The notes below the pieces were generated by a model that was not told the DNA's origin, did no database searches, and was given only the letters and a program-made list of their open reading frames with translations. From IMG/VR virus record IMGVR_UViG_3300023184_000025, positions 186,001 through 250,000 of that record: a DNA stretch of 64,000 nt; one strand, given 5' to 3'. This document shows, piece by piece, positions 4,590-47,800 of the stretch. Each line of letters begins with the position of its first letter. Positions within the stretch are counted from its first letter, which is position 1. Made by a program: the position numbers and the translations under genes.

Positions 4590-4625
4590 AAAAAAATCCT
4601 CCTAACTATGTAGCTGGGAGGATTC
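4590..4625 (-). terminator. Hairpin plus U-tract that also contains the RBS of the 4005-4589 gene
   Basis: Minus strand AATCCTCCCAGCTACATAGTTAGGAGGATT followed by a T run and then ATG. Confidence 0.6.
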
Positions 4626-4640
4626 TGAACGGTTAACAAA

Positions 4641-5303
4641 TTAAGGTGTGTAATTCTCAACAACACCAAGCGGAAGAGTTACGCCAATTGTACCAGACTT
4701 GATCTGACTGCCTTCGTCGGTGAAGAAGTTAACTGCATATCGATTATCACTGTAATCCAATGCAAACTTGTTTGTTAATTTTGCAATGGTTACTGACGTG
4801 CTATCTCCGTATTCTAGAGCAATGCTCATAAAACCAGAGGCTGGAGTTGCATCATCAACCAACACACAAATACCAACAAGGTATACAACACCAGTAGTTC
4901 CTAGGCCGGCGCCACTCACTGTGGCTGTAAAAACATCGCCACTTTGTGCATTTGCTGGACCACCAAGAGCTCGCCAATTGGTGTTACCAGCTGAGTTGAT
5001 GTAGTAAGTGTTACCAGCAACAATATCTTCATCTTGAATTGCTGTAGGAGCAGCCACCATGTACTTTGTGTTGCCCTTTTGACGAATAATAAATGCGCTA
5101 CGATATTGGCTGTCACCAGGGATATAAGCTGTACATTTAACAACAGGGTATGCTGCCGACGATACATCACTTGAACCGCCAACAACACCCAAGAACTGGT
5201 CACTGTTAAAAGTAGATGAGTACACAGGATCAGTCAACGCTGACCACATGTTAAAACCAATATCTTTGGTTGTTGATTTTTTAGTTTTTAGAGGACGACC
5301 CAT
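4641..5303 (-). CDS. Putative virion structural protein (MGRPL-start type)
   Basis: 220-aa ORF, strong AAGGAG RBS, late box at 5400-5405, IIRQKG motif. Confidence 0.6.
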   Translation of the reverse strand: MGRPLKTKKSTTKDIGFNMWSALTDPVYSSTFNSDQFLGVVGGSSDVSSAAYPVVKCTAYIPGDSQYRSAFIIRQKGNTKYMVAAPTAIQDEDIVAGNTYYINSAGNTNWRALGGPANAQSGDVFTATVSGAGLGTTGVVYLVGICVLVDDATPASGFMSIALEYGDSTSVTIAKLTNKFALDYSDNRYAVNFFTDEGSQIKSGTIGVTLPLGVVENYTP

Positions 5304-13163: not shown

Positions 13164-16100
13164 TTAGTTTTGACTTACTTGAAGTATTTTACTACTGATA
13201 TTAACATTGTCTCGTTGAGCCTGTACCATTTCTTGGATGGCACCAATCAACTCAGGTGTCACTGCATTGCCTTGAGTAGACTGTTGGGTGAACATTTCTT
13301 TAAAAGAATTTGTAAACTTTTCTAGTATTCCTGTAACTTTATCTTCTGTGGCAGTCTGTGTATTTTCCTGCAGACCTTTGACTAGTTCTGTGATTACTTT
13401 TGAATTTTCATCAAATAAGTTTTGCTTGCCAACTTCGCCTGTTTGCCAATCTCCAGTGCCCCAGCCTGTTCTAATCTGTTGCCGTTTGACATAATCTTCA
13501 GCTAACACTTCCATTCTAGACAACGGGTCTTCAATACTGCCGCCGGCCATTTTTCCAGCCTTGATTGCGGCACTATCCTGTTGTCTAATCATTTCTCTGA
13601 TTAGATCGTACTGGCCTCTCAGTGCTTTTGATTCTTCGGTTTGTGGGCCGTTTAGTCCTTGCACACCAATGTCGTTTTGTGCTGAAAATACTTTTCCTTC
13701 CGGTGTTGCCAACATGGCCCGCATGAAATCGCCAGGTTCCATTTTGCCATAGTTGAACTGTTTTTTCATCTCTGGCATGGCAGCAAACATTTCGTCTACT
13801 GCCATACTGAGCTTATCAGCAACACTTCCTAATTCAATAGCAAGGCCACCGCTTTGCTTGTCTACAGTCATTCCGGGGATTAATGTTCTAAATGCATCTC
13901 CGTATGTTTCGACTAATTGTTGTATGCTAGGCGGTTCAAATTTAACTGGTTCAATTGACAACGACTTGGACATGTCCCTGATTGCACTGGTAATTTGATC
14001 ACCAATGGTGTTTCTGTCAGGTGCCAGTGATGTAGTCATTTCATCAACAATATTAGATATGTCAATGCTGTCTGATTTTGACGGGTTCAAAGTTTTGAAC
14101 ATGTCTTTGTATGCTTCAATCAACTGCTGTCTATCCGGCTTGTCAAATTTAACTGGTATGCTCTTACCATCTGACATTGGAATAACTGCTTCTGTGCCGT
14201 GCAATGTTGCAGGATATCCTTTTGTTGGTCCTGAAAATACACCACCATCTGCCGCAGATACAATTTTTCCAGTTTTAAATCCTTCAACTCTGCTGATGGC
14301 TTCTAGCATCTGTTGACGCTGACCTGAATCAAGTTGATTTAATATAGTACTAGGATCAACGCCAACTGCACCCGCTACAGATTTAATATAAGCCGCTGTG
14401 TTGTTTTCATTGGGAGGTGCATATCTGCTAAGGGCATCAGTAATGCTTAAATTAGCATATTTTGATTTTAATCCAAACAGCAACTCTTCTTTGGCTTTGG
14501 TTCCATCGGCTAGTGTTGGAAATACTGCAAAGCGTCCGTCAGACCCAACTGCGCCAAACGACCGTGCAAATGCACCCATTTCTAGGTTGCCAGGATTATT
14601 GTTTCTCCAGTTACGTACACCTTCTCTGCGTTGCTTTTCGTCGTCTGTGGCTTGTACTTCTGTGAATCCTGGACCTGATCCTGTTACTGCTTTAATAGGT
14701 TTGTCTGTAGTAGCTTTGCCACCCATTGATCTGGTTTCAGGTCCGGTGCCTCCGCCAGGCTTACCTTGTGCCCCTGGCCCTACTGGTTCTCCACCACTAT
14801 AACCACTGCCGCGGCCTGCACCGGCGGTGCTAGTTCCTGGAGGACCAGCAGGTGCTGCCTGACCACCGCCTAAATATTTCTTAGTACCGGCATCGCCACG
14901 CCCAGTTTTTTCTAGTTCTGCAGTATCTGATGCAACACGTTCTTCTTTGGCTGCTCCGGCAATGCCTTTAATACGTGAACCTACGCTTTTAACCCCAACC
15001 AAACTAACTACATCACCCAGTGCATCGCCAAGATTTTCAATTGCTTTTGCAGTGGCAATACTAGCTTTTTCTGTTAGTTTGGCTTTTTCCCAATTGGCAT
15101 CGTCTTGCTTTGCAACTAGTTCTGCTCGTGATTTTTGATCAGCTAACAATTTGTCAGGATTCACTGCTAGGTCCGCCGCGGACACCGCGGTATCAGCCGC
15201 TGTTCGTCCAGGTCCTGCGCCGTCAGATGCACCACCAGCACCACCAGCAATTCCCGGAATTTCTATTCCTGTGGTCTTAGAAACAAATTTTAAGAATTCA
15301 TTTAATGAAGTTGTAAATCCAGAAATAGCAGTGGCCGCTGCCGGCATCAGTGTGAAGCCTAGATTTTGAATCTGCCGACTCATCTGCTCCATGTTTTTCT
15401 GAGCTTCAACTGTTTTGTTAGTTAACTCGTCTTGTCCAGCAACCTGTGCATCCTGCGCTTTTTTAGCTTTTAATACACCGTCAGCCATTGTGGCATTGTT
15501 TAGGTCACTGAGTTCTGAATATTTTAAGAACGTGCCTGTGCCGTCACCTAATGCCTTGGAATAATCTCGCTGAGTTTGAACGTTGTCTCGTGTGGCATTC
15601 TGTAACTCTTGTATAGCTTGATCTCTAGTGATTTCCCCAGCTTTTAGTCGTTCAATGATATCTGGCAGTTGACCTGCGGTGCTGTTAAATCCTTTTATTG
15701 CGGCATCGCTATTTGTCATGCCCGTTGATTGGTCACGAATTGCCTGCCCTAGTTCAGGAGCAATTTTACTAATCTGAGTTTGGAAGTCTAACAGTTCTTT
15801 GGCAGCGTCTTCTTGACCATTGGCCACCATTTCGTCATACTGAGCACGGAATCTACCTTCGCTGAGTGCCGCATCCTGTTGAGCTTGAATTTCTTTTCTG
15901 CTCATGCCAGTTAACTTGGTCAACTGATCTAGTTCTTTGGCGTATTCTACAGCACCTTGTGATAGTTGCTTTTGTGTCTTGTTCTGTGCTAGACCAAGTC
16001 GTGTTTGCTGTGCAACATAAGCAGCCGATGCTTCGCCTATTGTATCTGCACTAAAACCAATTCTACGTAGTTCGTCGCCGGCTTTGCTGTCAACAATACC

Positions 16101-16652
16101 ACCAACAATCTTGCTAAATTCATCAGCACCATCAGCAGTTAGCCCACGGAATCTGGCTAAGGAAGCTGAATTTTCTTTGATTGATTTTTGGAAGCCGTTT
16201 AGGCTCATGCCAGAACGTAGGAACTGCTCCTGAACGCCGGACATGCCTTTGGCAGTTACTGCACCTACGTCACTTAAATCTTGGAATGTTTGAGTAGTTT
16301 TCTGTAACTGCTCAATGACAAATTTTGTACTTTCAGCGGTGACTTTTACAGCCGCGCTCATTGCTTCGCCAGCAAACGGTATGGCTTTGGCCATACCTCC
16401 CAGTGCATTACTAACCGAATCAATTAAGGGATTTAACTGTGTAAATCCTTTTGATCCATCTCCTATATCAGCGGTGAATCGGCCCAGTGATTTGGTTACT
16501 TCTTTTGAACCTTCTTTCAGCGCCAATTTAAATTGATCTAAATTTTTACTAGATCCGTTTAGAGCCGTGTTTAATTTTTTCAACTCTTCATCGGTGAGCT
16601 GGGCACCAGATCTAAGTTTGTCAAAGAGGGCTTGTAATTCTTGTTCGTCCAT
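13164..16652 (-). CDS. Tape-measure-like tail protein with a putative peptidoglycan hydrolase domain
   Basis: Long helical A/Q/K-rich protein; RNWRNNNPGNL...YAPPNENNTAAY lysozyme-like domain; ADGGVFSGP...LHGTEAVIP motif. Confidence 0.75.
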   Translation of the reverse strand: MDEQELQALFDKLRSGAQLTDEELKKLNTALNGSSKNLDQFKLALKEGSKEVTKSLGRFTADIGDGSKGFTQLNPLIDSVSNALGGMAKAIPFAGEAMSAAVKVTAESTKFVIEQLQKTTQTFQDLSDVGAVTAKGMSGVQEQFLRSGMSLNGFQKSIKENSASLARFRGLTADGADEFSKIVGGIVDSKAGDELRRIGFSADTIGEASAAYVAQQTRLGLAQNKTQKQLSQGAVEYAKELDQLTKLTGMSRKEIQAQQDAALSEGRFRAQYDEMVANGQEDAAKELLDFQTQISKIAPELGQAIRDQSTGMTNSDAAIKGFNSTAGQLPDIIERLKAGEITRDQAIQELQNATRDNVQTQRDYSKALGDGTGTFLKYSELSDLNNATMADGVLKAKKAQDAQVAGQDELTNKTVEAQKNMEQMSRQIQNLGFTLMPAAATAISGFTTSLNEFLKFVSKTTGIEIPGIAGGAGGASDGAGPGRTAADTAVSAADLAVNPDKLLADQKSRAELVAKQDDANWEKAKLTEKASIATAKAIENLGDALGDVVSLVGVKSVGSRIKGIAGAAKEERVASDTAELEKTGRGDAGTKKYLGGGQAAPAGPPGTSTAGAGRGSGYSGGEPVGPGAQGKPGGGTGPETRSMGGKATTDKPIKAVTGSGPGFTEVQATDDEKQRREGVRNWRNNNPGNLEMGAFARSFGAVGSDGRFAVFPTLADGTKAKEELLFGLKSKYANLSITDALSRYAPPNENNTAAYIKSVAGAVGVDPSTILNQLDSGQRQQMLEAISRVEGFKTGKIVSAADGGVFSGPTKGYPATLHGTEAVIPMSDGKSIPVKFDKPDRQQLIEAYKDMFKTLNPSKSDSIDISNIVDEMTTSLAPDRNTIGDQITSAIRDMSKSLSIEPVKFEPPSIQQLVETYGDAFRTLIPGMTVDKQSGGLAIELGSVADKLSMAVDEMFAAMPEMKKQFNYGKMEPGDFMRAMLATPEGKVFSAQNDIGVQGLNGPQTEESKALRGQYDLIREMIRQQDSAAIKAGKMAGGSIEDPLSRMEVLAEDYVKRQQIRTGWGTGDWQTGEVGKQNLFDENSKVITELVKGLQENTQTATEDKVTGILEKFTNSFKEMFTQQSTQGNAVTPELIGAIQEMVQAQRDNVNISSKILQVSQN

Positions 16653-16662
16653 AATGTAGGTG

Positions 16663-16682
16663 TATAAGTACTGATATATTTA
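16663..16682. promoter_or_regulatory. Divergent late promoter pair
   Basis: TATAAGTA (+, 16663-16670) and TAAATA (-, 16677-16682) in a 42-nt gap between divergent tail genes. Confidence 0.55.
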
Positions 16683-16694
16683 TGGTACCCAAAC

Positions 16695-17537
16695 ATGACA
16701 CAAACAGCTAACCCACTAAAGCAATACTTTAGACAACCGGCAATCTATATTAGATTGCCATCAAAAGGTAAATTCTGGAATAGTGAAGCAATTACTATTC
16801 CGCCCAATCAGGAAATTCCCATTTACCCAATGACCGCAGTTGATGAAATCACTACCAGAACACCCGATGCTTTGTTCAACGGGTCTGCCATGGTTAAGAT
16901 TTTTGAAAGTTGTTGTCCAAACATTAAAGATGCATGGCAGGTACCTAGTCTAGACGTTGATACGTTATTGGTAGCAATACGTATTGCCACTTACGGTCAT
17001 GGCATGGACATAGGTACCAAATGCCCCAGTTGTGAAAACGAAGATGAATATCAAATTGATCTTCGAGTAGTACTTGAAAATATTAATTCTCCTGACTATG
17101 ATGTTCCAGTCAAAATTGGAGACTTAGAAGTGTATTTTAAACCAATGACCTATCAGGAATTAAATTCAAATAGTCAGATTCAATTTGAAGATCAAAAACT
17201 AGTAGCAATGTTTCAGAATGCAGAAATACCCGAAGAAGAAAAACTAAAGCAGTTGGGCGAAGCATTTTTAAAAATTACCAGTCTTACAATTAGAAGCATT
17301 GCTCAGAGTATTGGCGTAATTAAAACACCAGGTGCTCAGGTCAACGAACAAGAATTTATTGTTGAGTTTTTGAACAACTGTGAAAAATCTGCGTTTGGTG
17401 CAATACGTGACCGTGCAATTCAACTCAAACAAGAAGCTGAACTAAAACCAATTAAAATTAAATGTACCAATTGTAGTAATGAGTATGATCAAAACTTTAC
17501 ATTGGATATGTCAAATTTTTTCGATTCCAACTCTTGA
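16695..17537 (+). CDS. gp26: Baseplate hub / tail assembly chaperone (gp26-like)
   Basis: YIRLPSKG, PMTAVDEI, LLVAIRIATYG, two CxxC motifs (CPSC, CTNC), ending DMSNFF. Confidence 0.8.
   Translation: MTQTANPLKQYFRQPAIYIRLPSKGKFWNSEAITIPPNQEIPIYPMTAVDEITTRTPDALFNGSAMVKIFESCCPNIKDAWQVPSLDVDTLLVAIRIATYGHGMDIGTKCPSCENEDEYQIDLRVVLENINSPDYDVPVKIGDLEVYFKPMTYQELNSNSQIQFEDQKLVAMFQNAEIPEEEKLKQLGEAFLKITSLTIRSIAQSIGVIKTPGAQVNEQEFIVEFLNNCEKSAFGAIRDRAIQLKQEAELKPIKIKCTNCSNEYDQNFTLDMSNFFDSNS
17516..17522 (+). promoter_or_regulatory. Candidate -1 ribosomal frameshift site T TTT TTC
   Basis: X XXY YYZ heptamer in the correct phase at codons 275-276 of the gp26-like gene; the -1 frame is open into ORF 17534-17752. 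Confidence 0.6.
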
Positions 17538-17752
17538 GCCTGGACTCTGACCGCGTCATCAAGCTTGTTGACCGGATGGAAAAAGAGTGTGATCAAATAC
17601 GTGAAGAGTCCATAAAGTTTGCATGGTACATGCGCGGCGGCCTGTCCTATGAGGATGCCATGTCGTTGGCACCAAACGAAAGAAAAATTATCAATAATTT
17701 GATTAAAGATAATTTAGACACTACTAAAAAATCTGGATTACCTTTCTTCTAA
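17534..17752 (+). CDS. Tail chaperone extension / gp51-like small ORF (probably the C-terminus of a frameshift fusion)
   Basis: WYMRGGLSYEDAMSLAPNER motif; weak TTG start; lies in the -1 frame overlapping the gp26-like gene end. Confidence 0.6.
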   Translation: MSLDSDRVIKLVDRMEKECDQIREESIKFAWYMRGGLSYEDAMSLAPNERKIINNLIKDNLDTTKKSGLPFF

Positions 17753-18258
17753 TGGAACTAGAACAAGTCAGACAAGATATAGAACTGTGGATTACAAACT
17801 TCTTAGAAGTTCCACATCCTGCATTAGGGGGATTTTCTCCTTGTCCTTATGCACGGTCAGCACGAGTAAAGAACAGCTATGCAGTTTATCTTGGAGCCGA
17901 TCCTTACTACGATCTTAAAAATTGTGGGCGTCAAGGCATGGGCAACCGAGAAGTTATTATCTATGTGTACGATCCAACAGAATGGTCACACGATATGCTT
18001 GCTGGTAGTATTGAATTGGTTAACAAGGAAGTACTGTTACCTAGAGACATGCTGGCACTAGAAGATCACCCAGATGATGTTGAAATGATCAATGGTGTGT
18101 GCATGAATCAAGGCACGTATGCATTAGCATTGGTACAAAGTCTAAGTGATTTAAACATCAAAGCCAAGCAAATGGCTGACAAAGGATTTTATCACAACTG
18201 GCCCGAAGACTATCTACAAGGCCTGTTTCACCACAGACAAGATCCAAGGAACCCATAA
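17752..18258 (+). CDS. DUF1415-like protein
   Basis: W...GGFSPCPYAR and LEDHPD motifs resemble the DUF1415 CPFA/FHP motifs. Confidence 0.5.
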   Translation: MELEQVRQDIELWITNFLEVPHPALGGFSPCPYARSARVKNSYAVYLGADPYYDLKNCGRQGMGNREVIIYVYDPTEWSHDMLAGSIELVNKEVLLPRDMLALEDHPDDVEMINGVCMNQGTYALALVQSLSDLNIKAKQMADKGFYHNWPEDYLQGLFHHRQDPRNP

Positions 18259-29571: not shown

Positions 29572-30522
29572 CTACTCATCTTGGCTAGATACAACCAGTT
29601 CGGACAATGCAGCCGTGCCAGCTTCATCTAGACTAGATACAACCGGACCGGACAATGCAGCCATGCCAGCCTTGCCAGAATTTTGTCGAGTCCAACTTGG
29701 GTTTAGTCCGTTGATTTCTAAAATATCATCACGGATGTTCTGCATTTTTTTCTCAATGTTCAAGACACGAGTAAAGCTATTAGTGATAGCGGCAGTATAA
29801 TACGCAAAAGGGTTCTGCGATTTTGATTCATCAAATTGCAGTCCAATTTGACTGAGTTGTAACAGGGCTTGTCCCCGCATTTCTTCGTTGTAGGTGTACC
29901 CACGCCAGTTGCTCCTTGTTGCATATCTTTCACATAACTTCATAAACATTGTGGCCAGCTTACGAGTCATAGTACCGTGATCACGACTGTATTCTCCAGT
30001 TTCAAAATCCCCCTTCCAGTGGCTTCGACCCACAACGTAAGGTATTTTTTGATCTGTGAGTCGATAATGCCAAAACGGTGGAAAATTAACACGAACATGT
30101 GTTGGATCACCCACAGGCTCAACTTCTGCAATTTCATCAGGCACAGAGTCAACTATGTCTTCTTGTAAATCTAAAATATCTTCAAGCTTGCGTTTTTTTT
30201 GCTGGCTTTTTGGAATCTTCTTGGGAGCCATTGGTATGTGATCCCAACAGGTGATTCTGAACACAAGATCAGTATTGGGAATTTTCTTTTGGTCAATGAC
30301 CTCACCTGTTTCACGTTTGATACGATCTGCACGATTTTTACGTGCATCGACTATGGTGCGCTGATTGATCTTGTCTACGCTGGGCAAGATAACATCATAC
30401 TGATGGTCGGTTACTGGATCTAAATAACTACAGTAAGTGTTTTTGCTTAAATGGATTTCTTTTAAAATATCTCTGTTGTTGAGATAGTTAACCTTTGCAG
30501 GGGGTTTAACAATTAAAGTCAT
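29572..30522 (-). CDS. gp55: Late-transcription sigma factor (gp55-like)
   Basis: YLNNRDILKEI, NWRGYTYNEEM and FDESKSQNPFAYYT...SFTRVLNIEKK motifs; adjacent to gp47 as in T4. Confidence 0.88.
   Translation of the reverse strand: MTLIVKPPAKVNYLNNRDILKEIHLSKNTYCSYLDPVTDHQYDVILPSVDKINQRTIVDARKNRADRIKRETGEVIDQKKIPNTDLVFRITCWDHIPMAPKKIPKSQQKKRKLEDILDLQEDIVDSVPDEIAEVEPVGDPTHVRVNFPPFWHYRLTDQKIPYVVGRSHWKGDFETGEYSRDHGTMTRKLATMFMKLCERYATRSNWRGYTYNEEMRGQALLQLSQIGLQFDESKSQNPFAYYTAAITNSFTRVLNIEKKMQNIRDDILEINGLNPSWTRQNSGKAGMAALSGPVVSSLDEAGTAALSELVVSSQDE
29575..29670 (-). repeat. Two-copy 48-nt tandem repeat at the gp55 C-terminus
   Basis: Encodes AGMAALSGPVVSSLDE and AGTAALSELVVSSQDE. Confidence 0.85.
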
Positions 30523-38341: not shown

Positions 38342-41300
38342 ATGGCAAAGACAGCAAGACAAACAGCAATATTTGGAGTTGAGGACTGGAAGAGATTATA
38401 CCAGACCTACCGCGAGGCCGACTTTCAAAGCTACGACTTTGAAACACTACGCAAGAGCTTTGTTGACTACCTGAGACTTTATTATCCAGAAACCTTCAAT
38501 GACTACATTGAAAGTTCAGAATTTATTGCATTACTCGACGTTATGGCCTTTATGGGACAGAGTCTTGCATTCCGTAATGATCTAAACACTCGCGAAAACT
38601 TTATGGACACCGCTGAACGTCGTGACAGCGTTGTTCGTCTTGCCAATCTTATAAGTTATACCCCAAAGCGTAACGAAGCCGCTCAGGGATTTTTAAAAGT
38701 ATTCTCTGTGTCAACCACAGAAAATGTTGTTGACTACAACGGAATTAATCTTTCAAATGTTACCATTGACTGGAACGACCCGACAAACCCAAATTGGTTT
38801 GAACAACTAACACTGATCATCAATGCCAGTCTAGTAGACAGTCAGAAATACGGACGTCCAGGCAACAAGCAAACACTACTAGGTATTGACACTTCTGAAT
38901 ATGCAATTAATCTAGTGCCTGGGTTTTTACCTGTTATTCCTTATACCACCCCAGTAGATGGCGTTAACATGCCTTTTGAAGCAGTAAGCGGAACCAGTCA
39001 AGGCAAAGACTACATCTATGAACCAGCACCTCGACCAAATGGTGTATTTAATGTTGTGTACCGCAACGACTCACTGGGATATGGCAGCGAAAACACTGGA
39101 TTCTTTTTCTTGTTCAAACAAGGTGTATTACAAAACCAAGACTTTAACCTAGCCGAAGCACTTCCTAACCGCACAGTCAATATCAATATTGAAGGTATCA
39201 ATAATCAAGACTATTGGCTATATCAACTGGACAATATTGGTTCTATTGCCACTGAGTGGAAATATGTTGAAAGTGTCTATGCTGCCGCACTTGAACAGCT
39301 TGCACCCGATCAACGCAAAATTTATTCTATTACAAGTCGAACCAATGATCAGATCACACTGACATTTGGTGACGGAGTGTTTAGCGAAGTCCCTGTTGGA
39401 TTTTATCGTACCTATGTTCGTGCCAGCAATGGATTAAAATATATTATTAATCCTGAGGAAATGCAGAGCATTTCTTTGCCTATCAGTTATATTAGCCGTA
39501 CAGGAAGACTAGAAACTATCACATTCACATGTGGTATCACTACCCCAGTGAGCAATGCCGCTCCTCGAGAAACCATTGACGAAATTAAACAACGTGCGCC
39601 TGCTCGTTACTACACACAGAACCGTATGGTCAACGGCGAAGATTATAATAACTTTCCGTTTACTCTGTATAATAGCATTATCAAAAGCAAGGCAGTGGCA
39701 CGTTCTAGTACAGGCACCAGCAGATATGTAGATTTCACTGATATCACCGGCAAGTACAGTTCCACTAACATTTTTGCATCTGATGGCGTATTATATCGTC
39801 AGAACGTATTGCCAAGCTTTGATTTTGCATGGATTAATCGCAACGACATTGTTGATACTATTGCCAACAGCATAGAACCTATACTACCTAGTCGTAGTAT
39901 GCAACAGTTTTACTATGAAAACTATCCTCGTCCAAGTTTATCTGTTTTAAATTTTGCGTGGAATCAAAGTACCACCGTGGTTAAAGAAACCACAGGATAT
40001 TTTTATGTTGGCACACCTGCTGCCCCACAGTCTATTGGTAGCTATGCCAGCAACAATGCCAAATACCTAACACAAGGGTCACTGATTAAATTTGTTGCAC
40101 CTACTGGTTATTTCTTTGACACAAACAACAAGTTAGTTGTTGGAGTTCCAGTACGTGGTGATGAAAAATTAGTTATTTGGGCAACAATCATGGCAGTGGT
40201 GTTAGACGGAACTAACCAGGGCCTGGGCAACTTTCCTGATGGAACTGGACCAGTTATTTTAAACAATTTTGTACCCACTGGCGCACTTGCAGTTGAAGTA
40301 ATTCCTAAATTCATTGACGATTTACCAAGCACAATTCGACAACAGATGTTACAACAAATTGAGTTGTTTAGAAACTTTGGGTTGGGTTATAACAACTTAA
40401 CAGCAACGTGGTACTTAATTACCAGCTCAAATCTACACCAAGATGCTCCGTTTAGCCTTTCGTATGCACAAAACACCGAAGGACTAAATCTTGATGCTTC
40501 CTGGCTAATTCAATTTATTACCAACGGTGTTTCTTATACTGTGGTTTCTCGTGGCCTGGATTATATTTTTGCCAGTGTATTACAAACACGTTTTACTTTT
40601 GATGGCAATGAAAACATCTATGACAGCCGCACTGGATTAGTAATTAATGATTTTATAAGAGTATTAAAAACAAACTCAAAACCAGACAGTAACCAACCGT
40701 TGACCAGTGATATAACCATGGACATTATTGCACAACCAGTGCAGAGCGACGGCTATGCCAACGACTACGAAGTTGTTGTTAGCTATGTTGATTCTGATGC
40801 TGACGGAGTTGCAGATAACCCAGACTTCTTTGATGAGATTGTTGCACCTGATGTTGACCCTAATTCAAAATTGGTATTTTTAAAACAAACAGTTGACTTT
40901 GATAATCTAGAAAGATATCTGCCGGTTGAGCCGGGTATTGTAAATTCCCAATATGCAACCAAAGATGATATTGAAGTGGTTAAAACTCAATTCATTAGCG
41001 GACAAGTATTTTATGCGTATACAGAAAAAGTTTTTTACGAGTTAGTCTTTACAGTAGTAAATGGAAATGTACAACGTACATTGGTCCAGTCAAATATCTA
41101 CAGAGCTAGAATTGGCAGACAAACACTTGGGTTTCAATATAGACATAATAGTCCATTGACTAACATTATTGATCCAGGAACAACAAATATTATTGACTTA
41201 TATTTGGTAGTTGAAGAGTATTATATTGCTTATCAAAATTATATTAAAGATACTACTGGTACTGTTCCTGAACCAAACCCGCCAACAATTTCAGAGCTGT

Positions 41301-41815
41301 CAACCGCCTACGCTAAACTAGATGACTATAAGATGATTTCAGACAATCTGGTTCCTAACACAGTGATCTTTAAGCCATTATTTGGTCCCAAAGCCGCCAC
41401 ACAATTACAAGCAACAATTAAAGTTGTTAAAGCACCAAAAGTAACAGCCACAGTCAGCGAAATTAAGAGTCAAGTTGTTGCAAATGTAAACAATTATTTT
41501 ACCATTGATAAATGGGATTTTGGCGATAGCTTTTACTTCTCTGAATTGGCTGCATACCTACATAAACAAATGGGTTCTATTATTAGTTCTGTGGTTCTTG
41601 TCCCACTAAACCCATTAAAGAGTTTTGGTGATTTATATGAAATTAGATCAGCGCCAAATGAAATTTTTGTGAATGGTGCTACAGTGGCTGACGTTCAAGT
41701 GATTGATGCACTAACACAAAGTAACATTCAAAGTCAAACTCCGGTATCAGGGTTATACCCTGTCAGCACCACTGGAAGATTAAACAGCACACTAAGTCAG
41801 ACGGGTGAATATTAA
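38342..41815 (+). CDS. gp6: Baseplate wedge protein gp6-like
   Basis: YDFETLR, ENFMDTAERRDSVVRLA...YTPKR, FGDGVF and ETIDEIKQRAP...QNRMVNGEDY motifs. Confidence 0.88.
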   Translation: MAKTARQTAIFGVEDWKRLYQTYREADFQSYDFETLRKSFVDYLRLYYPETFNDYIESSEFIALLDVMAFMGQSLAFRNDLNTRENFMDTAERRDSVVRLANLISYTPKRNEAAQGFLKVFSVSTTENVVDYNGINLSNVTIDWNDPTNPNWFEQLTLIINASLVDSQKYGRPGNKQTLLGIDTSEYAINLVPGFLPVIPYTTPVDGVNMPFEAVSGTSQGKDYIYEPAPRPNGVFNVVYRNDSLGYGSENTGFFFLFKQGVLQNQDFNLAEALPNRTVNINIEGINNQDYWLYQLDNIGSIATEWKYVESVYAAALEQLAPDQRKIYSITSRTNDQITLTFGDGVFSEVPVGFYRTYVRASNGLKYIINPEEMQSISLPISYISRTGRLETITFTCGITTPVSNAAPRETIDEIKQRAPARYYTQNRMVNGEDYNNFPFTLYNSIIKSKAVARSSTGTSRYVDFTDITGKYSSTNIFASDGVLYRQNVLPSFDFAWINRNDIVDTIANSIEPILPSRSMQQFYYENYPRPSLSVLNFAWNQSTTVVKETTGYFYVGTPAAPQSIGSYASNNAKYLTQGSLIKFVAPTGYFFDTNNKLVVGVPVRGDEKLVIWATIMAVVLDGTNQGLGNFPDGTGPVILNNFVPTGALAVEVIPKFIDDLPSTIRQQMLQQIELFRNFGLGYNNLTATWYLITSSNLHQDAPFSLSYAQNTEGLNLDASWLIQFITNGVSYTVVSRGLDYIFASVLQTRFTFDGNENIYDSRTGLVINDFIRVLKTNSKPDSNQPLTSDITMDIIAQPVQSDGYANDYEVVVSYVDSDADGVADNPDFFDEIVAPDVDPNSKLVFLKQTVDFDNLERYLPVEPGIVNSQYATKDDIEVVKTQFISGQVFYAYTEKVFYELVFTVVNGNVQRTLVQSNIYRARIGRQTLGFQYRHNSPLTNIIDPGTTNIIDLYLVVEEYYIAYQNYIKDTTGTVPEPNPPTISELSTAYAKLDDYKMISDNLVPNTVIFKPLFGPKAATQLQATIKVVKAPKVTATVSEIKSQVVANVNNYFTIDKWDFGDSFYFSELAAYLHKQMGSIISSVVLVPLNPLKSFGDLYEIRSAPNEIFVNGATVADVQVIDALTQSNIQSQTPVSGLYPVSTTGRLNSTLSQTGEY

Positions 41816-44800
41816 TGGCAATACGCAGACGTACAATTGACCTTCTACCAGAGATTTTTCGCACAGACACAAACCGAAAGTTTTTGTCTGCTACGTTAGA
41901 TCAACTGACACAAGAACCTATCACAAAGAAAACACAAGGTTATGTAGGCCGTCGTGTTGGCCCTGGGGTGAACCCTGCAGATTATTATGTCACAGAGCCA
42001 ACGGCCATAAGAACAAATTATCAGCTCGAACCAGGTATTATTTTCTTAAAACCTGATACTAGCACAGCCATTGACGCAATCACATATCCAGGCATGGTTG
42101 ATGCATTAGAGTTACAAAATGCCAATGTTACCAAACAAGATAGACTCTTTGAAAGCCAGTATTATTCTTGGGATCCTTTCTGCGACTTTGATAAGTTTTC
42201 AAATTATAGTCAGTACTACTGGCTACCACAAGGGGTAGACAGCGTTGACATCAGCACAACTGAAGTTCCACTAACTGACACTTGGGAAGTAACTCGCGGA
42301 ACTGACGATTACACATTTAGCGACGTTCGGGGCAAAGATCCAATCATTACCGTTGCACGTGGCGGCAGTTATCAATTCACAGTGAATCAACCTGGTAGTA
42401 ATTTCTGGATTCAAGCTGAGCCAGGCATTAATGGCCGGTTATCAGCAACTCCAAATATTAGCAGTAGAGGTGTACTCGGTGTAGTCAACAATGGTGAAGA
42501 CCAGGGCACAGTCACTTTTAATGTTCCGTTGAAAACTGCTCAGGACTTTTACTACAACTTAAATGATATCGGCAGCGTTGACCTTGTAACAACCTTAAAC
42601 TTTAATCAGATTAATAACATCTCTGTTGCGCAGTTCTTGCAACAATTTCCAAATGGAATTGACGGTACCACCAACCTCAATAACAAAACTGTTATTTTTC
42701 TAAACAGGAATTCAGATGCTGAATCGGGCGGCTGGCAATTAACTACACCATTTGACCCATTGGTTCGTACAGTACCTAATCAGGTTGGTACATCTATTAG
42801 CTACGATATAAACGGAGAGCCCTATGATTATGTTCCCTATGAAACACTTACGGATATAATTGTCAGTGGTGAACCTGATCCATTAGATGGCCAGCCAGGC
42901 AGCTACGACAGCATTTTATTTGATCAGACAACAGATATCACATCACAAGCACAGCGTTATAGTGTTTGGCAAATTCAATATATTTCCGAAACTGGACTAG
43001 ATCCATATATTCGTCTGTCCAGTATACTGCCTGTGAATAATCTCAGTAAGTTTAAAATCTTGTTCGGAGAAACTTATAGCAGTACTTCATGGTATAAGAA
43101 TGCATCGGGCTATTTTGAGCAAATTCCTTTACTGACAGCAGTACTCAACACGCTGTGGTATCAAGACAGTACTAATCCTGAAATTTTTGGACAAATACGA
43201 CTAATTGATGCCGAGCAAGTAGAACCAATTGATATCAATGACATCATTGGCGCTAAAAATTACATTAGTCAAAATGGTGTTGAGTTTACCAATGGATTAA
43301 AAGTTCAATTTCGTGGACCCACAATCCCTGCTGGCTATCAGGATCTAGAATACTATGTTGAAGGTGTTGGCACCGGACCGGGCATTTCTGCTCGAGTTGG
43401 ATTTATTGACGGAGAAGCTTATTTTGGTGCCTGGCATCTTAAAGGTAATCAAAAAATCACAGGAACAATACGTCAGACTGACGTGTATCAACAATATATC
43501 TATGATACCGTGGAAGAAAGTCTGCTCAATATTGGCACCGGTGAAACAACTGGTACACCATTGGCAACCAGTGGCGTAGCAGGAGCACCAAGAGGCAATG
43601 GTATTATTTTAATTCCAGTTAGCGAACTAGTAACTCCAGAAACATATACCAAAAGTGAAACTATTCCTTATGATTTTACATCATACGATTCTACTCCCTG
43701 GGATGCTAGTTTAAATGCGCCAACGGTGCCTGATTACATTACAATAAATCGTGCAAGCCAGGATAGAAATGCCTGGAGTCGTAGCAATCGTTGGTTCCAC
43801 AAAGATGTTATTAATGCCACTGCTGAATACAATAATCAGGTGGCAGTTATAGATAATAATTATAGAGCAAAACGCCCAATTATTGAATTCCGTGCCAACA
43901 TTGATTTATACAATAACGGAACACAGGCCAAACCACCAGTTAACATTGTTGACTTTGCCATCACAGATGCATTCAGCAATATCAACGGCCAACGAGGCTA
44001 TAGCACTGATGGGTATACATTTATTGATGGAAGCCTTGTGATTTTTGCCAACGATTCAGATGCAACTGTACGCAATAGAATCTACAAAGTTAAGTTTATT
44101 GATACCACAGGCACGGGAGCTAAAATTATTGACTTAATCCCAGTTATCAACAGTCAAGCATTGGTAAATCAAACTGTTGTTTGTCTAAGCGGCAATACAC
44201 AGCAAGGAAAAAGCTATTGGTTTGACGGAGTATCTTGGTACGAAGCACAGGAAAAAATTGGAGTTAACCAACCACCGTTGTTTGATGTGTTTGACCCTGA
44301 TGGAGTAAGTTTTGGCAATCGTGCAGTTTACCCTAGTTCAACATTTACAGGGTCAAGATTGTTTGGATACGGAGTAGGAACCACATCGTCAGTAGACGTT
44401 GTGCTTGGTTTTTCTTTAAAATATTTGAATATTAATAATCTTGGTGACATTGTATTTGAAAATTACTTGTACAACGATACTTTTATCTATGTCAAAGATA
44501 ACATAAGTTCAGAATTAAAAGTAAGCACTGGGTTTGTTAGAGAATATATTGACCGTGTATCGTTTACCGAAGTGATCGGCTGGCAAAAAGCGGCAGCAGA
44601 AAACCGCAGCCGCCAAATATTTAGATTTACATACAACGGTGAAAACTTAAAACTAGATGTGCCCGTGACAACTACATCAGTGTTCCCAGCAGTACAGATG
44701 TTTATTGAAGGTGTGTTTGTTGACCCAACCAAGTATTCAGTTACTATTAATGGGCAAAATACCATAATTGAATTGGCCACTACTCCTGCACTTGGCACAA

Positions 44801-47800
44801 TAATTGAACTACAAGTACTGAGCAACTATGCAAGTAAAGTCGGATTCTATGAAGTTCCGTTAAATCTTGAAAATAATCCTCTTAACGAAAACAGCGGATC
44901 GTATACTCTTGGCACAATCAGAACCCACTATGAAAGTATTGGGCAAAATCTTAAAAATATTGTCGGACCAATCAATGGCGCAAATAACACTCGAGATCTT
45001 GGAGATTTAATTCCGTACGGTGACAACATCGTGCAACACTCTGCTCCACTGGCACTAACAGGTGTATTCCTTAGAGAACAACAATACGAGTTGTTTAATT
45101 CTTTAAGATTTAACAGTCAAGAATACACAAAATATAAATCATTGTTGCTGGACTTGGCTGCCAAAGGAAATTACATTAACTTAACACCAACTCAGGTGTT
45201 GGATTCTGTACTACAAGAAATTTCAATAGGCCGATCAAATCTGTCTCCATTCTACTGGAGTGACATGATTCCCAGCGGAGAAACATACGCTGAAATAACA
45301 TACACATATTCGTTTACCAGCGACAGTACATTTGATCTATCAACAATTTATAATTTTACATCTTCAAACTACCACAGCGTATTAGTTTACTTAAACGGAA
45401 ATATACTAACTCGTGAGTATGATTATACAGTATCTGCAGATTCTCCTACAATGACAATCACAGCAACTTTAGCCGTTGGGGATGTCATTAAAATTCGCGA
45501 ATATAACACAACCTATGGTAGTTACGTTCCAAACACACCAACAAAAATTGGATTATATCCAGCATTCAAGCCATCTATGTTTGTGTCAGACACCTATGTT
45601 AATTCAACAGAAGTAATACAAGGACATGACGGCAGTATTACTGTAGCATTTGGAGATTTCCGAGATCAAGTGTTATTAGAATTCGAAACACGAATCTTTA
45701 ATAACTTAAAAATTATCAGTGAAATTCCAATAACCCTAGACGACGTCATGCCCGGACAATTTAGAACCACTGAATATTCTCTTACTGAAATTAACAATAT
45801 TCTCAGCGAAGATTTTTTAAGCTGGGTAGGATGGAATAAACTTGACTACAATACTCAGTTTTATGTACCATTAAATCCGTTCACATATAATTACAGCCAG
45901 AGTGCAAACAAGTTAGATAATCAACCACTGTTGGGTAACTGGCGCGGCAATTACTTGTATTTTTACGATACAATTACTCCTAATACAACCCCCTGGGAAA
46001 TGCTTGGATTTAGTCAGCAACCATATTGGTGGGAAGCAGAATACGGTCCTGCGCCATACACATCAGGAAACTTGGTATTATGGGATGATCTTGAAAAGGG
46101 CCTAATCAAAGACCCAGTCGGTTACTATGTTGACCCACGATATGTACGTCCTGGGCTAACTCAGGTTATCCCGTCAGGGTCGGAAGGAGAGTTAACCAGC
46201 CCATTTAATTCAATAGTTGGAAATTTTGACCAAACCAGTTTCAGACGTAGTTGGGTGTTTGGCGATGATGGCCCAGTAGAGTCAGCCTGGCGCACCAGTA
46301 GCGCCTGGGCATTTGCTGTAATGCGATTATTGGCATTAACTAAACCCGCTAAGTTTTTTGCATTATTTGCCGACAGAGATCGTTATGTATATGATTCTGC
46401 ACATGAGCAATATCTATGGGACAATCGTTACCGTCTTGATGCTAAAAATCTAGAACCGTTATATGGTAACGGTGTCAGCAAAGCCAGCTATATTGACTGG
46501 ATCATTGACTACAATCGTCAGCGAGGTATTAATAGTACAACAGGATTAACTGATTCATTATATAACATTGATGTACGGCTCTGCTGGAGAATGGCTGCAT
46601 TTAGCGATAAAAATTATTTAAAAATTTATACTGAACGCTCTACACCAAACAGTTTAAATGCAAGTTTAATGTTGCCCGATGAGAGCTATCAATTATTACT
46701 ATATAAAAACCAACCTTTCTCAAAGATTGTCTACAGCTCTATTGTTGTACAAAGCTCTGAGGACGGTTGGGCTGTGTATGGCTACAGTAACAATGCTCCT
46801 TACTTTAATATATTAGTATCAAAACCAAGCGGAAAGACCCTCACCATTTCTGCCAACGGCGTTAATATCAGTGTTCCAGTTGAATATTCAGACACAGTGG
46901 CCGAAGTTCCATACGGATATGCATTTACTAACAAGGCCGCAGTCTGCGATTTTATTTTAAGCTATGGTAAACTTCTTGAAACTCAGGGTTTGATTTTTGA
47001 AAATAGAGAAAACGGTTCTGCTCTTAACTGGCAACAAATGGCTCAAGAATTTGTGTACTGGAGCAATCAGGGATGGGCACCAGGTGCAATTATCAATCTT
47101 AACCCAGCGGCAACATCAATTTCTGTTACACGGCCAGGCGCAGTGGTAGAAAGCCTAGTGCCAGTTACTATCGATAACATTATTTTAAATCAAAATCGTA
47201 CACCTGTTCCTGGAACTGATCTACAAATTGATCGTTTTGGTAATACATTTAAAGTTTCTAGTTTAACTTCAAACACTATTAACTTTTTAAATTTAAAATT
47301 TACTGCCTACGAACACCTTGCAATTCTTGACAATACCAGCATTTTTGCTGACTTGATATATCAACCGGTGACCGGCGCACGTCAAAGTCGAGTTCGAGTT
47401 TTTGGCACACTAAGTGGTGACTGGAACGGTACAGTTGATGCCCCAGGGTTTGTGTTAAACCAGGACAACATTGTGGCCTGGATACCAAATAAAAAATACG
47501 CCAAGGGTGAAATTGTATTATTTAAAAATGAATACTGGAGTGCAAGTACAATAATTCAGCCGTCACAGGAATTCAATTATTCTGTTTGGATTAAAAGTGA
47601 TTATGGACAAATACAAAAAGGCCTGCTGCCAAATGCCGCCAATGACAGCAACCAGCTGGCACAAGCATACAGCATTTATAGCGCAAACTTAGAACGTGAT
47701 GTTGATTTATTCAGTTATGGGTTGATTGGTTTCCGTCCTCGCGAATACATGCAGGCCCTTAATCTTACCGATGTAAGTCAGGTTAACCTATACCAGTCGT

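What the first reader, a model, noticed from the sequence alone, without database searches (positions are those of the whole stretch)
16695..17752. Lambda G/GT-style programmed -1 frameshift in the gp26-like gene of a T4-like phage
Seen: the gene ends ...ATG TCA AAT TTT TTC GAT TCC AAC TCT TGA. T TTT TTC (17516-17522) is a correctly phased slippery heptamer. The -1 frame reads CGA TTC CAA CTC TTG AGC... straight into the 72-aa ORF, which has only a TTG start without a clear RBS. Predicted products are 280 aa and a 352-aa fusion. The pair is adjacent (divergent) to the tape-measure-like gene. Known: tail assembly chaperones of lambda, P2 and Mu are made as G and GT by such frameshifts. Inference: these 'baseplate hub' genes are the G/GT chaperones of this large-myovirus group.
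Basis: partly seen in the sequence, partly recalled or inferred. Interest (0 to 1): 0.68.

Follow-up and report, generated by a model that had tools for sequence, protein, structure and literature searches.

The report
Conserved frameshift in phage hub-chaperone gene
A freshwater giant phage very probably makes a short and a long form of its gp26/gp51-type baseplate-hub assembly protein from one gene by a ribosome slip at T TTT TTC, a signal kept letter for letter in about 130 distant relatives, which may explain why T4 was thought to lack the tail-chaperone frameshift of other long-tailed phages.

Summary
ORF 16695..17537 (280 aa) belongs to PF12322, the family of T4 gp26 and gp51. It carries a correctly phased T_TTT_TTC at 17516-17522. 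The -1 frame is open from there to 17752, giving a predicted 352-aa fusion.

It is far more than chance. All 55 distinct relatives in jumbo-phage contigs, 9 cultured jumbo phages and 68 distinct T4-like cyanophage genes keep the heptamer in phase; two of the cultured phages, and CM1, have T_TTT_TTT. Every synonymous position is fixed. The 0-frame stop lies 1 to 11 codons further on, and the -1 peptide is conserved from its first codon. Four relatives have no ATG, GTG or TTG in the first 32-36 codons of the -1 ORF.

T4 has two paralogues. gp26 stops 3 residues after the FF, and gp51 reads on in frame. A profile of cyanophage fusions aligns with gp51 through the junction. Genomes with the heptamer have one PF12322 gene; T4 has two. 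In three Gram-positive myoviruses the pair lies between the tube and tape-measure genes.

I conclude a programmed -1 frameshift (0.85). A G/GT-like chaperone role is plausible but unproven, with no homology to known chaperone families. I found no prior description.

The parts
16695..17537 (+). 0-frame ORF, 280 aa: gp26/gp51-family (PF12322) body with two CxxC pairs (Zn ribbon). This is the short product.
   Evidence: All 40 aligned relatives hit PF12322. AlphaFold model has pLDDT 88.9. BFVD fold matches are only gp26/gp51-like hub assembly proteins.
17516..17522 (+). Slippery heptamer T_TTT_TTC, phased X_XXY_YYZ. It sits at the end of the PF12322 domain, on the conserved FF.
   Evidence: Phase checked by hand. 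It is invariant in 55 jumbo and 68 cyanophage distinct ORFs.
17523..17523 (+). G that follows the heptamer. It makes the invariant first -1 codon CGN (Arg).
   Evidence: Invariant in alignment A1 and in 68/68 cyanophage genes. PA5oct has A here; Xoo-sp13 and CM1 also differ.
17535..17537 (+). 0-frame stop TGA, four codons after the heptamer.
   Evidence: The distance from heptamer to stop varies from 1 to 11 codons among relatives.
17522..17752 (+). -1 frame extension of 76 codons plus TAA. It is a small helical domain with the WYMRGG and P-x-E-R motifs and ends in LPFF. It forms the C-terminal part of the 352-aa long product.
   Evidence: Model has pLDDT 85 and three helices. There are 834 unannotated homologues in metagenomes.
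17534..17536 (+). TTG (Leu5 of the extension), the only canonical start near the 5' end of the -1 ORF. It overlaps the stop as TTGA. This is the rival start codon.
   Evidence: It is replaced by TTA or other non-start codons in several relatives.
16653..16694 (.). 42-nt divergent intergenic region between the putative tape-measure gene and the hub-chaperone gene. It contains TATAAGTA at 16663-16670.
   Evidence: The promoter reading is an inference and was not tested.
13164..16652 (-). Divergent neighbour, 1162 aa: a putative tape-measure or virion protein with a lysin-like stretch.
   Evidence: phrog_2276 at 4e-21, phrog_873 at 1.9e-27, phrog_14121. Its counterparts in CBB and PA5oct were found in virions by MS. 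No similarity to T4 gp29.

Best explanation
The single PF12322 (T4 gp26/gp51 family) gene of this 345-kb freshwater phage is decoded in two ways. Most ribosomes read to the TGA at 17535 and make a 280-aa protein. A fraction slips back one base on U_UUU_UUC (17516-17522). Both tRNA-Phe re-pair, UUU to UUU in the P site and UUC to UUU in the A site. These ribosomes continue in the -1 frame to 17752 and make a 352-aa protein: the same body plus a 76-residue helical C-terminal domain.

The two forms correspond to the two separate paralogous genes of T4. gp26 stops just after the FF motif. gp51 carries a C-terminal extension in frame. Both T4 proteins are non-virion hub assembly factors.

Status of each step:
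- Shown by comparison: the signal and the -1 coding are under selection.
- Shown: T4 gp51 is colinear with the cyanophage fusion.
- Inferred: the slip is ribosomal.
- Inferred: the ratio of the two forms matters.
- Inferred: the pair acts like lambda G/GT on the tape measure and hub during tail initiation.
For: 1. The heptamer is phased and present in every complete relative. That covers 69 of 69 complete loci fetched up to that point (66 IMG/VR, 3 cultured), giving 51 distinct junctions. It also covers K64-1, GAP32, PA5oct, SCTP-2, fHe-Yen9-04, Phosso, Atu_ph07 and PBECO4, with T_TTT_TTT in Xoo-sp13 and CM1, and 68 of 68 distinct cyanophage ORFs.
2. Synonymous sites are frozen. Among 52 columns with a conserved degenerate residue, the top codon holds 30-87% everywhere except the two Phe codons. 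Those are TTT 55/55 and TTC 55/55, although TTC is only 29% of Phe codons in these genes. The preceding residue varies (N, S, H, D, R; A or S in cyanophages), but its codon always ends in T. Median pairwise protein identity is 42%.
3. The -1 peptide is conserved from its first codon: R1 is invariant and L4 is over 90% conserved. Meanwhile the 0-frame tail varies in length from 1 to 11 codons.
4. L013, L024, L046 and L068 have no ATG, GTG or TTG in the first 32-36 codons of the -1 ORF.
5. T4 gp26 (residues 1-206) and gp51 (1-201) both match PF12322 over its full length and are paralogues.
6. The HMM of cyanophage fusions aligns with gp51 residues 123-244 across the junction. The score rises from 10.1 to 21.9 bits. 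With gp26 the alignment ends at the junction and the score does not change.
7. The cyanophage extension hits phrog_634 at 6.7e-28, as does the gp51 C-terminus at 1.2e-23. The cyanophage extension HMM scores 18.2 bits on gp51 residues 199-249, against a maximum of 10.0 in 1000 shuffles.
8. There is one PF12322 copy in this genome, in two complete cyanophage genomes, in a 354-kb relative and in PBECO4. T4 has two.
9. U_UU.Y is the second most shift-prone class of tetramer in E. coli, and homogeneous heptamers are favoured (PMC4066793).
Against: - There is no direct evidence of the fusion protein: no MS, reporter or ribosome profiling data.
- No conserved stimulatory RNA structure was found. RNAalifold gave 0 pairs. 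The window's own fold has z = -0.23. A hand-picked hairpin was 57% paired against 53% in shuffles.
- Many relatives do have an ATG or TTG overlapping the stop, so coupled re-initiation could co-exist.
- FF is an ancient amino-acid motif (T4 gp26 has EFF, encoded TTC TTT), so part of the conservation is at the protein level.
- Homology of this window's extension to the gp51 C-terminus is only marginal: hhalign E 0.03-0.45, and an HMM score of 4.6 bits that equals the best of 1000 shuffles.
- The chaperone role has no homology support: no tail-assembly-chaperone Pfam hit and no PDB fold match.
Confidence: 0.85

Rival explanations
1. There is no recoding. The small ORF is a separate gene translated by coupled termination and re-initiation, at TTG 17534 (TTGA overlap) or ATG 17576. 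The T-run merely encodes a conserved Phe-Phe at the C-terminus of the body.
For: - TTGA, ATGA or TAATG overlaps of stop and start occur in the window, Phosso, Atu_ph07, PBECO4 and about a dozen metagenomic loci.
- All databases annotate two genes.
- FF is conserved as protein even in T4 gp26 and gp51.
Against: - It does not explain why the codon before FF always ends in T whatever the residue.
- It does not explain why TTT-TTC is used 55/55 and 68/68 times, when other FF dipeptides in the same genes use all four codon pairs.
- The -1 frame is conserved as protein from the base after the heptamer, up to 11 codons before the 0-frame stop.
- Four relatives lack any canonical start for 32-36 codons.
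- The TTG is TTA in many relatives.
- T4 gp51 has the two parts in one frame.
Confidence: 0.06
2. The fusion is made, but by transcriptional slippage. RNA polymerase adds one U in the U6 run, and ribosomes then read the edited mRNA normally.
For: - The conserved element is a homopolymer run.
- SP-15 has the same T6 run, but its extension is in the +1 frame. That is easy to explain by loss of one U.
- No stimulatory RNA structure was found.
Against: - The run is only 6 long, below the 7-9 usually needed by bacterial polymerases (own knowledge).
- Selection keeps the seventh base C in 123 of 123 distinct genes of the two metagenomic sets rather than lengthening the run. Only Xoo-sp13 and CM1 have T7.
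- The strict codon phase matters for ribosomes, not for polymerase.
- HSE3 and BRock have the extension in +1 with no long T-run.
- A contig from an RNA library across the site shows the unedited T6 (record 3). Contigs cannot show minor forms, so this is weak evidence.
Confidence: 0.07
3. The frameshift is real, but the proteins have nothing to do with the tape measure. Both forms act only on the hub (gp5/gp27-like proteins), as catalysts of hub assembly. The G/GT resemblance is only in gene expression.
For: - T4 gp26 and gp51 are described as hub assembly chaperones or catalysts (PMC3004832).
- There is no homology or fold similarity to known tail assembly chaperones.
- In the window the gene is not between the tube and tape-measure genes.
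Against: - In SP-15, HSE3 and BRock the PF12322 gene and its small ORF occupy exactly the slot between the tube and tape-measure genes.
- In the jumbo phages it is next to the putative tape measure in 7 of 8 cultured genomes looked at. Atu_ph07 is the exception.
- In T4 the tape measure gp29 is itself a hub component.
Confidence: 0.35

Closest known systems
Lambda gpG/gpGT, P2 gpE/E+E' and Mu tail assembly chaperone frameshift (Levin 1993; Xu, Hendrix, Duda 2004; reviewed in PMC5009743)
   Same: [quoted passage not shown]
- A short abundant form and a rarer C-terminally extended form.
- No obligatory RNA stimulator.
- The P2 site, T_TTT_TTG (from memory), differs by one base.
- The T4 homologues are assembly factors absent from virions.
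- In Gram-positive relatives the pair lies between the tube and tape-measure genes.
   Different: - The protein family is unrelated: PF12322, about 280 aa with a Zn ribbon, against about 140 aa for gpG.
- The extension is only 62-80 aa.
- In this phage the gene is divergent from the putative tape measure, and the tube gene lies about 40 kb away in the genome.
- Binding partners are unknown.
- The review states that the G-T frameshift is conserved in long-tailed phages 'except T4'.
T4 gp26 and gp51 (baseplate hub assembly chaperone and catalyst), PF12322 / phrog_150 / phrog_634
   Same: - The body is a member of the same Pfam family.
- gp26 ends 3 residues after the FF where the heptamer sits.
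- gp51 continues in frame with KLLVNPDEI...MIPAERGFVLKLIEKD, which mirrors RxxLL..PEEI...P-x-E-R of the -1 extensions.
- The T4 genes are adjacent and divergent.
   Different: - T4 uses two genes and no recoding. Its gene 26 has GAG TTC TTT GAG, which is not slippery.
- Similarity of this window's extension to the gp51 C-terminus is marginal. It is solid only for the cyanophage extension.
'gp51 baseplate hub assembly catalyst' mini-ORFs of T4-like cyanophages (e.g. S-RIM4 RW110999_010)
   Same: - The architecture is identical: PF12322 body, NNT TTT TTC GNN stop, then a -1 ORF.
- The first -1 residue is Arg, followed by x-x-L.
   Different: - They are annotated as an independent 43-aa gene starting at an internal ATG.
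- The extension is 62-68 aa, and its sequence family (phrog_634) is distinct from that of the jumbo phages (phrog_18291, or none).
E. coli dnaX tau/gamma -1 frameshift
   Same: One gene gives two products with a common N-terminal body through a homopolymeric heptamer.
   Different: In dnaX the frameshift product is the shorter one, and the shift needs an upstream SD-like element and a downstream hairpin. Neither element was seen here.

Membership tests
Programmed -1 ribosomal frameshift site (X_XXY_YYZ type) | A heptamer X_XXY_YYZ in the 0-frame phase that allows both tRNAs to re-pair | tested here: met
   T_TTT_TTC at 17516-17522, phase checked against ATG 16695.
Programmed -1 ribosomal frameshift site (X_XXY_YYZ type) | A -1 ORF open from the heptamer that encodes a conserved peptide | tested here: met
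   76 codons are open. R1 is invariant, and L4, W35, R38 and G39 are conserved in 40 sequences.
Programmed -1 ribosomal frameshift site (X_XXY_YYZ type) | Conservation of the site at synonymous positions across diverged homologues | tested here: met
   55/55 and 68/68 distinct ORFs keep the site. The control was 50 other conserved columns, with a top codon share of 30-87%.
Programmed -1 ribosomal frameshift site (X_XXY_YYZ type) | A stimulatory element (downstream hairpin or pseudoknot, or upstream SD). This is common but not obligatory. | tested here: not met
   RNAalifold gave 0 pairs. The fold z-score is -0.23. A candidate hairpin did no better than shuffles. No SD-like run is seen in the 12 nt upstream in A1.
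Programmed -1 ribosomal frameshift site (X_XXY_YYZ type) | The trans-frame protein is observed | not testable with these tools
   No proteomic data are on hand. RNA-library contigs show only the unedited template.
PF12322 T4_baseplate (T4 gp26/gp51) | A match above Pfam's gathering score over most of the model | tested here: met
   57.8 bits against a cut-off of 24.5, model positions 15-218 of 219. All 40 of 40 relatives match.
PF12322 T4_baseplate (T4 gp26/gp51) | Two CxxC pairs (Zn ribbon) and a C-terminal FF | tested here: met
   C110, C113, C257 and C260 are at least 90% conserved, and F275 and F276 are invariant. T4 gp26 has CTCG and CPECG followed by EFF.
T4 gp51 long form | The C-terminal extension is homologous to gp51 residues about 202-249 | tested here: inconclusive
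   Cyanophage extension: yes (phrog_634 at 6.7e-28; 18.2 bits against a shuffle maximum of 10.0). This window's extension: hhalign E 0.03-0.45 in the same register, and 4.6 bits, equal to the best of 1000 shuffles.
Lambda-type tail assembly chaperones (G/GT, Pfam Phage_TAC families) | Sequence or fold membership in a known tail assembly chaperone family | tested here: not met
   No such family appears among the Pfam hits at E up to 1 for 40 bodies and 40 extensions. There is no PDB fold match. BFVD neighbours are all gp26/gp51-like.
Lambda-type tail assembly chaperones (G/GT, Pfam Phage_TAC families) | The gene pair lies between the tube (major tail) gene and the tape-measure gene, on the same strand | tested here: not met
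   In the window it is divergent from the putative tape measure, and the tube gene is at G000 position about 161.8 kb against about 202.7 kb. The feature is met in the distant PF12322 relatives SP-15, HSE3 and BRock.
Lambda-type tail assembly chaperones (G/GT, Pfam Phage_TAC families) | The body binds the tape measure, the extension binds the tube protein, and both are absent from virions | not testable with these tools
   The complex prediction of extension plus tube protein gave no verdict. The body is not listed in the CBB virion MS table and carries no MS note in PA5oct, while the neighbour is detected in both. This is only a hint.

The most novel reading that the evidence does not exclude
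PF12322 proteins with their small C-terminal domain are the missing tail-assembly-chaperone pair of the T4 supergroup and of many other large myoviruses. On this reading the ancestral state is one gene read in two frames. That state survives as a -1 shift at T_TTT_TTC in jumbo phages and T4-like cyanophages, and probably as a +1 shift at TTT_C in Gram-positive myoviruses. T4 and its close kin resolved the recoding into two paralogous genes, with 26 as the G-like short form and 51 as the GT-like long form. That would make T4 only an apparent exception to the otherwise universal G/GT rule.
Probability: 0.4. Interest if true: 0.85.

Novelty: new variant of a known kind. Interest (0 to 1): 0.78.

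Why it matters
The G/GT frameshift is one of the most conserved recoding events known, and T4 is quoted as the exception (PMC5009743). If the reading here is right, four things follow.
1. A whole supergroup gains a recoding event that is missing from every annotation I saw. The group comprises Rak2-like, PA5oct-like and Atu_ph07-like jumbo phages, hundreds of freshwater and marine contigs, and the abundant T4-like cyanophages.
2. The puzzling mini 'gp51' of cyanophages, and 834 unannotated small ORFs, are explained as the C-terminal domain of a fusion protein.
3. The roles of T4 gp26 and gp51, unclear since the 1970s, get a concrete and testable model: short and long forms of one chaperone.
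4. It gives a natural example of a frameshift replaced by gene duplication, or the reverse.

It also matters for annotation pipelines, which should join these ORFs.

Tried and rejected
- **DNA-level search of cultured phages:** no match. Only protein-level relatives exist, at about 30% identity.
- **Downstream stimulatory RNA:** RNAalifold on 46 junctions gave no pairs. The window's single-sequence fold is no better than shuffles. A hairpin I saw by eye in several sequences (A1 columns 43-47 with 56-60) is paired in 57% of cells against 53% in shuffles, and it lies 23 nt from the heptamer. I rejected it.
- **Fold searches:** neither the body nor the extension has a PDB match with Foldseek. VIA-align matched only the helical hairpin 148-219, at Z of 8.2 or less, which is background for helices.
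- **Pfam and PHROG scans of the extension:** nothing for the window's own extension.
- **Window extension profile against T4 gp51:** the best hhalign hit was to gp51 residues 33-65 (probability 3-4%). I treat it as noise.
- **Complex prediction of the extension with the phage's tail tube protein (L081:1426-2040:-):** no verdict, so it is evidence neither way.
- **Putative tape measure against T4 gp29:** no similarity. This is uninformative, because tape measures diverge fast.
- **Reads:** only assembled contigs were available, two of them from RNA libraries. They show the template sequence without indels and cannot reveal minor slipped transcripts.
- **Literature:** ten full-text searches found no paper describing a frameshift in gp26/gp51-type genes. 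The library lacks most subscription journals, so a prior description cannot be excluded.
- **Not done:**
  - The large representative protein search, which was not needed.
  - A fold of the fused 352-aa protein.
Full report
**1. The observation**

- ORF 16695..17537 (+, 280 aa) ends ATG TCA AAT TTT TTC GAT TCC AAC TCT TGA.
- Codons begin at positions divisible by three, so T_TTT_TTC (17516-17522) has the X_XXY_YYZ phase.
- After a -1 slip the reading continues CGA TTC CAA CTC TTG AGC ... to the TAA at 17750-17752. This is the frame of the 72-aa ORF listed at 17534..17752.
- The predicted products are 280 aa and 276 + 76 = 352 aa, with the junction ...DMSNFF|RFQLLSLDSDR.

The body is a PF12322 'T4_baseplate' protein (1.7e-15) and falls in phrog_150 'baseplate hub'.

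The divergent neighbour (13164..16652, 1162 aa) hits a tape-measure PHROG, but only over a lysin-like stretch. It has no similarity to T4 gp29. 'Tape-measure-like' is therefore plausible, not shown.

The window is bases 186001-250000 of a 345,154-bp virus record judged 99% complete. It comes from lake and freshwater metagenomes. It also encodes T4-type portal, head, gp5-, gp6-, gp46/47- and gp55-like genes.

**2. The heptamer is under selection at the nucleotide level**

Protein-level searches found about 100 cultured jumbo phages at roughly 30% identity. They include Phosso, Atu_ph07, PBECO4/121Q, K64-1, GAP32, CBB, PA5oct, SCTP-2, fHe-Yen9-04 and Xoo-sp13. A further 70 IMG/VR loci have 35-50% identity.
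- Every locus whose gene is complete ends NNT TTT TTC in phase.
- Xoo-sp13 and CM1 have T_TTT_TTT.
- In a nucleotide alignment of 46 junctions the only invariant run is TTTTTTCG.

Among 55 distinct ORFs the median pairwise protein identity is 42%. I looked at all 52 columns where one degenerate amino acid is kept in at least 85% of sequences.
- In 50 of them the commonest codon holds 30-87%.
- The two Phe codons of the heptamer are TTT 55/55 and TTC 55/55, although TTC makes up only 29% of Phe codons in these genes.
- Other FF dipeptides in the same genes use all four codon pairs.
- The residue before FF varies (N, S, H, D, R), but its codon always ends in T.

Treating the sequences as independent gives about 1e-52. 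That figure overstates the case because the sequences are related. The internal control of the 50 other columns does not have this weakness.

**3. The -1 frame is read from the heptamer, not from a later start**

- The 0-frame stop lies 1, 3, 4, 6, 10 or 11 codons after the heptamer in different phages, and the 0-frame tail is not conserved.
- The -1 peptide is colinear and conserved from its first codon: R1 is invariant and L4 is over 90% conserved, followed by ...WYMRGG...P-x-E-R....
- The TTG at 17534, which could serve as a start in the window, is TTA or another codon in many relatives.
- L013, L024, L046 and L068 have no ATG, GTG or TTG in the first 32-36 codons of the -1 ORF.
- The ATG at 17576 is not conserved.
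- Database annotations start the small ORF at whatever internal ATG is present, or omit it.

**4. The same signal in T4-like cyanophages, and the link to T4 gp51**

Cyanophage S-RIM4 has a PF12322 gene annotated 'baseplate hub assembly chaperone' that ends GCT TTT TTC GAG TAG. The annotated 43-aa 'baseplate hub assembly catalyst (gp51)' lies in its -1 frame, which is open from the heptamer. Among 80 related IMG/VR loci, all 68 distinct ORFs have NNT TTT TTC G NN stop. The preceding codon is TCT, AGT or GCT, although GCA is the commonest Ala codon.

The cyanophage extension hits phrog_634 at 6.7e-28. The C-terminus of T4 gp51 hits the same profile at 1.2e-23, and gp51 as a whole is phrog_150, like the window's body.

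Pfam places both T4 gp26 (residues 1-206 of 208) and T4 gp51 (1-201 of 249) on the full PF12322 model. The two are paralogues (BLASTP 2e-6).
- gp26 ends ...EFFELL. Its DNA there is GAG TTC TTT GAG, which is not slippery.
- gp51 reads ...DVF KLLVNPDEI...KMIPAERGFVLKLIEKDKQ in one frame.

An HMM built from cyanophage fusion sequences aligns with gp51 residues 123-244 straight through the junction. It scores 21.9 bits, against 10.1 for the body alone. The extension HMM alone scores 18.2 bits on gp51 residues 199-249, against at most 10.0 in 1000 shuffles.

So T4 gp51 has the architecture of the frameshift product and gp26 that of the 0-frame product. Genomes with the heptamer carry one PF12322 gene: this genome, two complete cyanophages, a 354-kb relative and PBECO4. 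T4 carries two, adjacent and divergent.

**5. How far this holds for the window's own extension**

The positional equivalence is exact. The heptamer is the same, it sits at the same domain boundary, Arg comes first, L-L follows at +4/+5, and a P-x-E-[RK] helix lies in the same register.

Sequence tests are only marginal.
- hhalign of jumbo against cyanophage extension profiles gives E 0.03-0.45 in the expected register.
- The jumbo fusion HMM gains a median 6.7 bits on cyanophage fusions over cyanophage bodies.
- 8 of 32 cyanophage extensions exceed the 99th percentile of shuffles, and gp51 residues 199-249 score no better than the best of 1000 shuffles.
- The extensions of HSE3, SP-15 and LR756508 score above all 800 shuffles with the jumbo profile. 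HSE3 and BRock also score 9-10 bits with the cyanophage profile, which suggests one diverged family.

I treat homology of the window's extension with the gp51 C-terminus as likely but not demonstrated.

**6. Mechanism**

U_UUU_UUC lets the P-site tRNA-Phe move from UUU to UUU and the A-site tRNA-Phe from UUC to UUU. In E. coli the U_UU.Y tetramers are second only to A_AA.G, and homogeneous heptamers are favoured (PMC4066793).

I found no conserved downstream structure and no upstream SD. This is like the lambda G/GT site, which to my knowledge needs no stimulator. A low efficiency of a few percent is therefore my expectation. That is an inference, not a result.

Transcriptional slippage on the U6 run would give the same protein. 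I rate it unlikely, because the run is short, its phase is fixed and its seventh base is kept as C. SP-15, which has the same T6 run but a +1 extension, keeps the possibility alive. The only RNA-library data are contigs, which show the template form.

**7. Function**

[quoted passage not shown] The T4 hub contains the tape measure gp29.

In SP-15, HSE3 and BRock the gene order is sheath, tube, PF12322 gene, small overlapping ORF, then tape measure (in BRock followed by the gpD-like gene). That is the slot of G/GT or E/E+E'. The bodies are confirmed as PF12322 members.

In the jumbo phages the gene is next to a large virion protein that may be the tape measure. The body is absent from the CBB virion MS table and carries no MS note in PA5oct, while the neighbour is detected in both.

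Against membership in the known chaperone families:
- There is no Pfam chaperone hit.
- There is no PDB fold match.
- The fold is found only among gp26/gp51-like proteins.
- The protein has a Zn ribbon.
- The extension is small, three helices at pLDDT 85.

A complex prediction of the extension with the tube protein gave no verdict. I therefore say it works like G/GT in how it is expressed, and probably in its role. It is not a member of the G/GT protein families.

**8. Known or new**

[quoted passage not shown] None of the jumbo-phage genome papers that mention the hub gene mentions a frameshift. No searchable paper combines gp26 or gp51 with a frameshift in this sense. All GenBank records I saw annotate two genes, or fewer.

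Within the limits of the library, which lacks most subscription journals, this appears to be undescribed.

**9. Verdict**

| Question | Result | Confidence |
|---|---|---|
| Is the observation correct? | Confirmed | - |
| Is there a programmed -1 frameshift? | Strongly supported by comparative evidence, untested experimentally | 0.85 |
| Is there a G/GT-like chaperone role, with T4 26/51 as the split version? | Attractive and testable | about 0.4-0.5 |

Noticed in passing
L084 (SP-15) 2185-2413; L166 (HSE3) 4680-4901; L167 (BRock) 4480-4715: In three Gram-positive myoviruses the small ORF after the PF12322 gene is in the +1 frame. All three have TTT_C at the conserved FF position: GAA TTT TTT CAC, TTC TTT CGT and CTG TTT CGC. 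The HSE3 motif matches the influenza PA-X +1 site UUU_CGU (from memory). This may be a +1 programmed frameshift. The small ORFs also have their own ATG.
   Followed up: partly
L082 (LR756508, 484-kb uncultured phage) 2234-2533: The PF12322 gene ends ...NFLFPTE* without any T-run. The extension-like ORF (YYSNGGYSW...) is in the +1 frame, with an ATG 11 codons before the 0-frame stop. It scores 13.5 bits with the jumbo extension profile.
   Followed up: partly
L063 (IMGVR_UViG_3300046092_000083) about 1825-1830: The PF12322 ORF has an in-frame TAA at codon 109, yet it keeps the same heptamer and extension as L042. This could be a sequencing error, a pseudogene or something else.
   Followed up: no
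window 17735-17749 and 17514-17534: Both predicted products end in a Phe-Phe-type motif: the body in ...NFF(DSNS) and the extension in ...GLPFF. T4 gp26 ends ...EFFELL. This may be a shared C-terminal docking motif. It is unexplained.
   Followed up: no
window 16663-16670: TATAAGTA lies 25 nt before ATG 16695 and differs by one base from the T4 late promoter TATAAATA. The window encodes a gp55-like late sigma factor at 29572..30522 (-).
   Followed up: no
window 41815..56097 (+): A single 4760-aa ORF lies directly after the gp6-like wedge gene (38342..41815). It was not examined.
   Followed up: no
L002 3445-3567; L075; L079 1189-2064: Public annotations of this locus are poor.
- The Atu_ph07 small ORF is called from an internal ATG (123 nt).
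- K64-1 has neither gene annotated.
- The fHe-Yen9-04 body is named a P-type ATPase.
- The WPEC5 body is named a portal protein.
   Followed up: no
L081 276-2040 (G000 about 160.6-162.4 kb): Next to the 205-aa tail tube gene (phrog_4542) lies a 379-aa tube-like paralogue (phrog_13438). It may be a tube initiator or a second tube protein.
   Followed up: no
window 16500-18000 in runs X9, X6, X19: Related strains occur in river and lake metagenomes of at least 12 studies. A contig of run X9 differs at 17 of 1501 positions, but at none between 17476 and 17622.
   Followed up: partly
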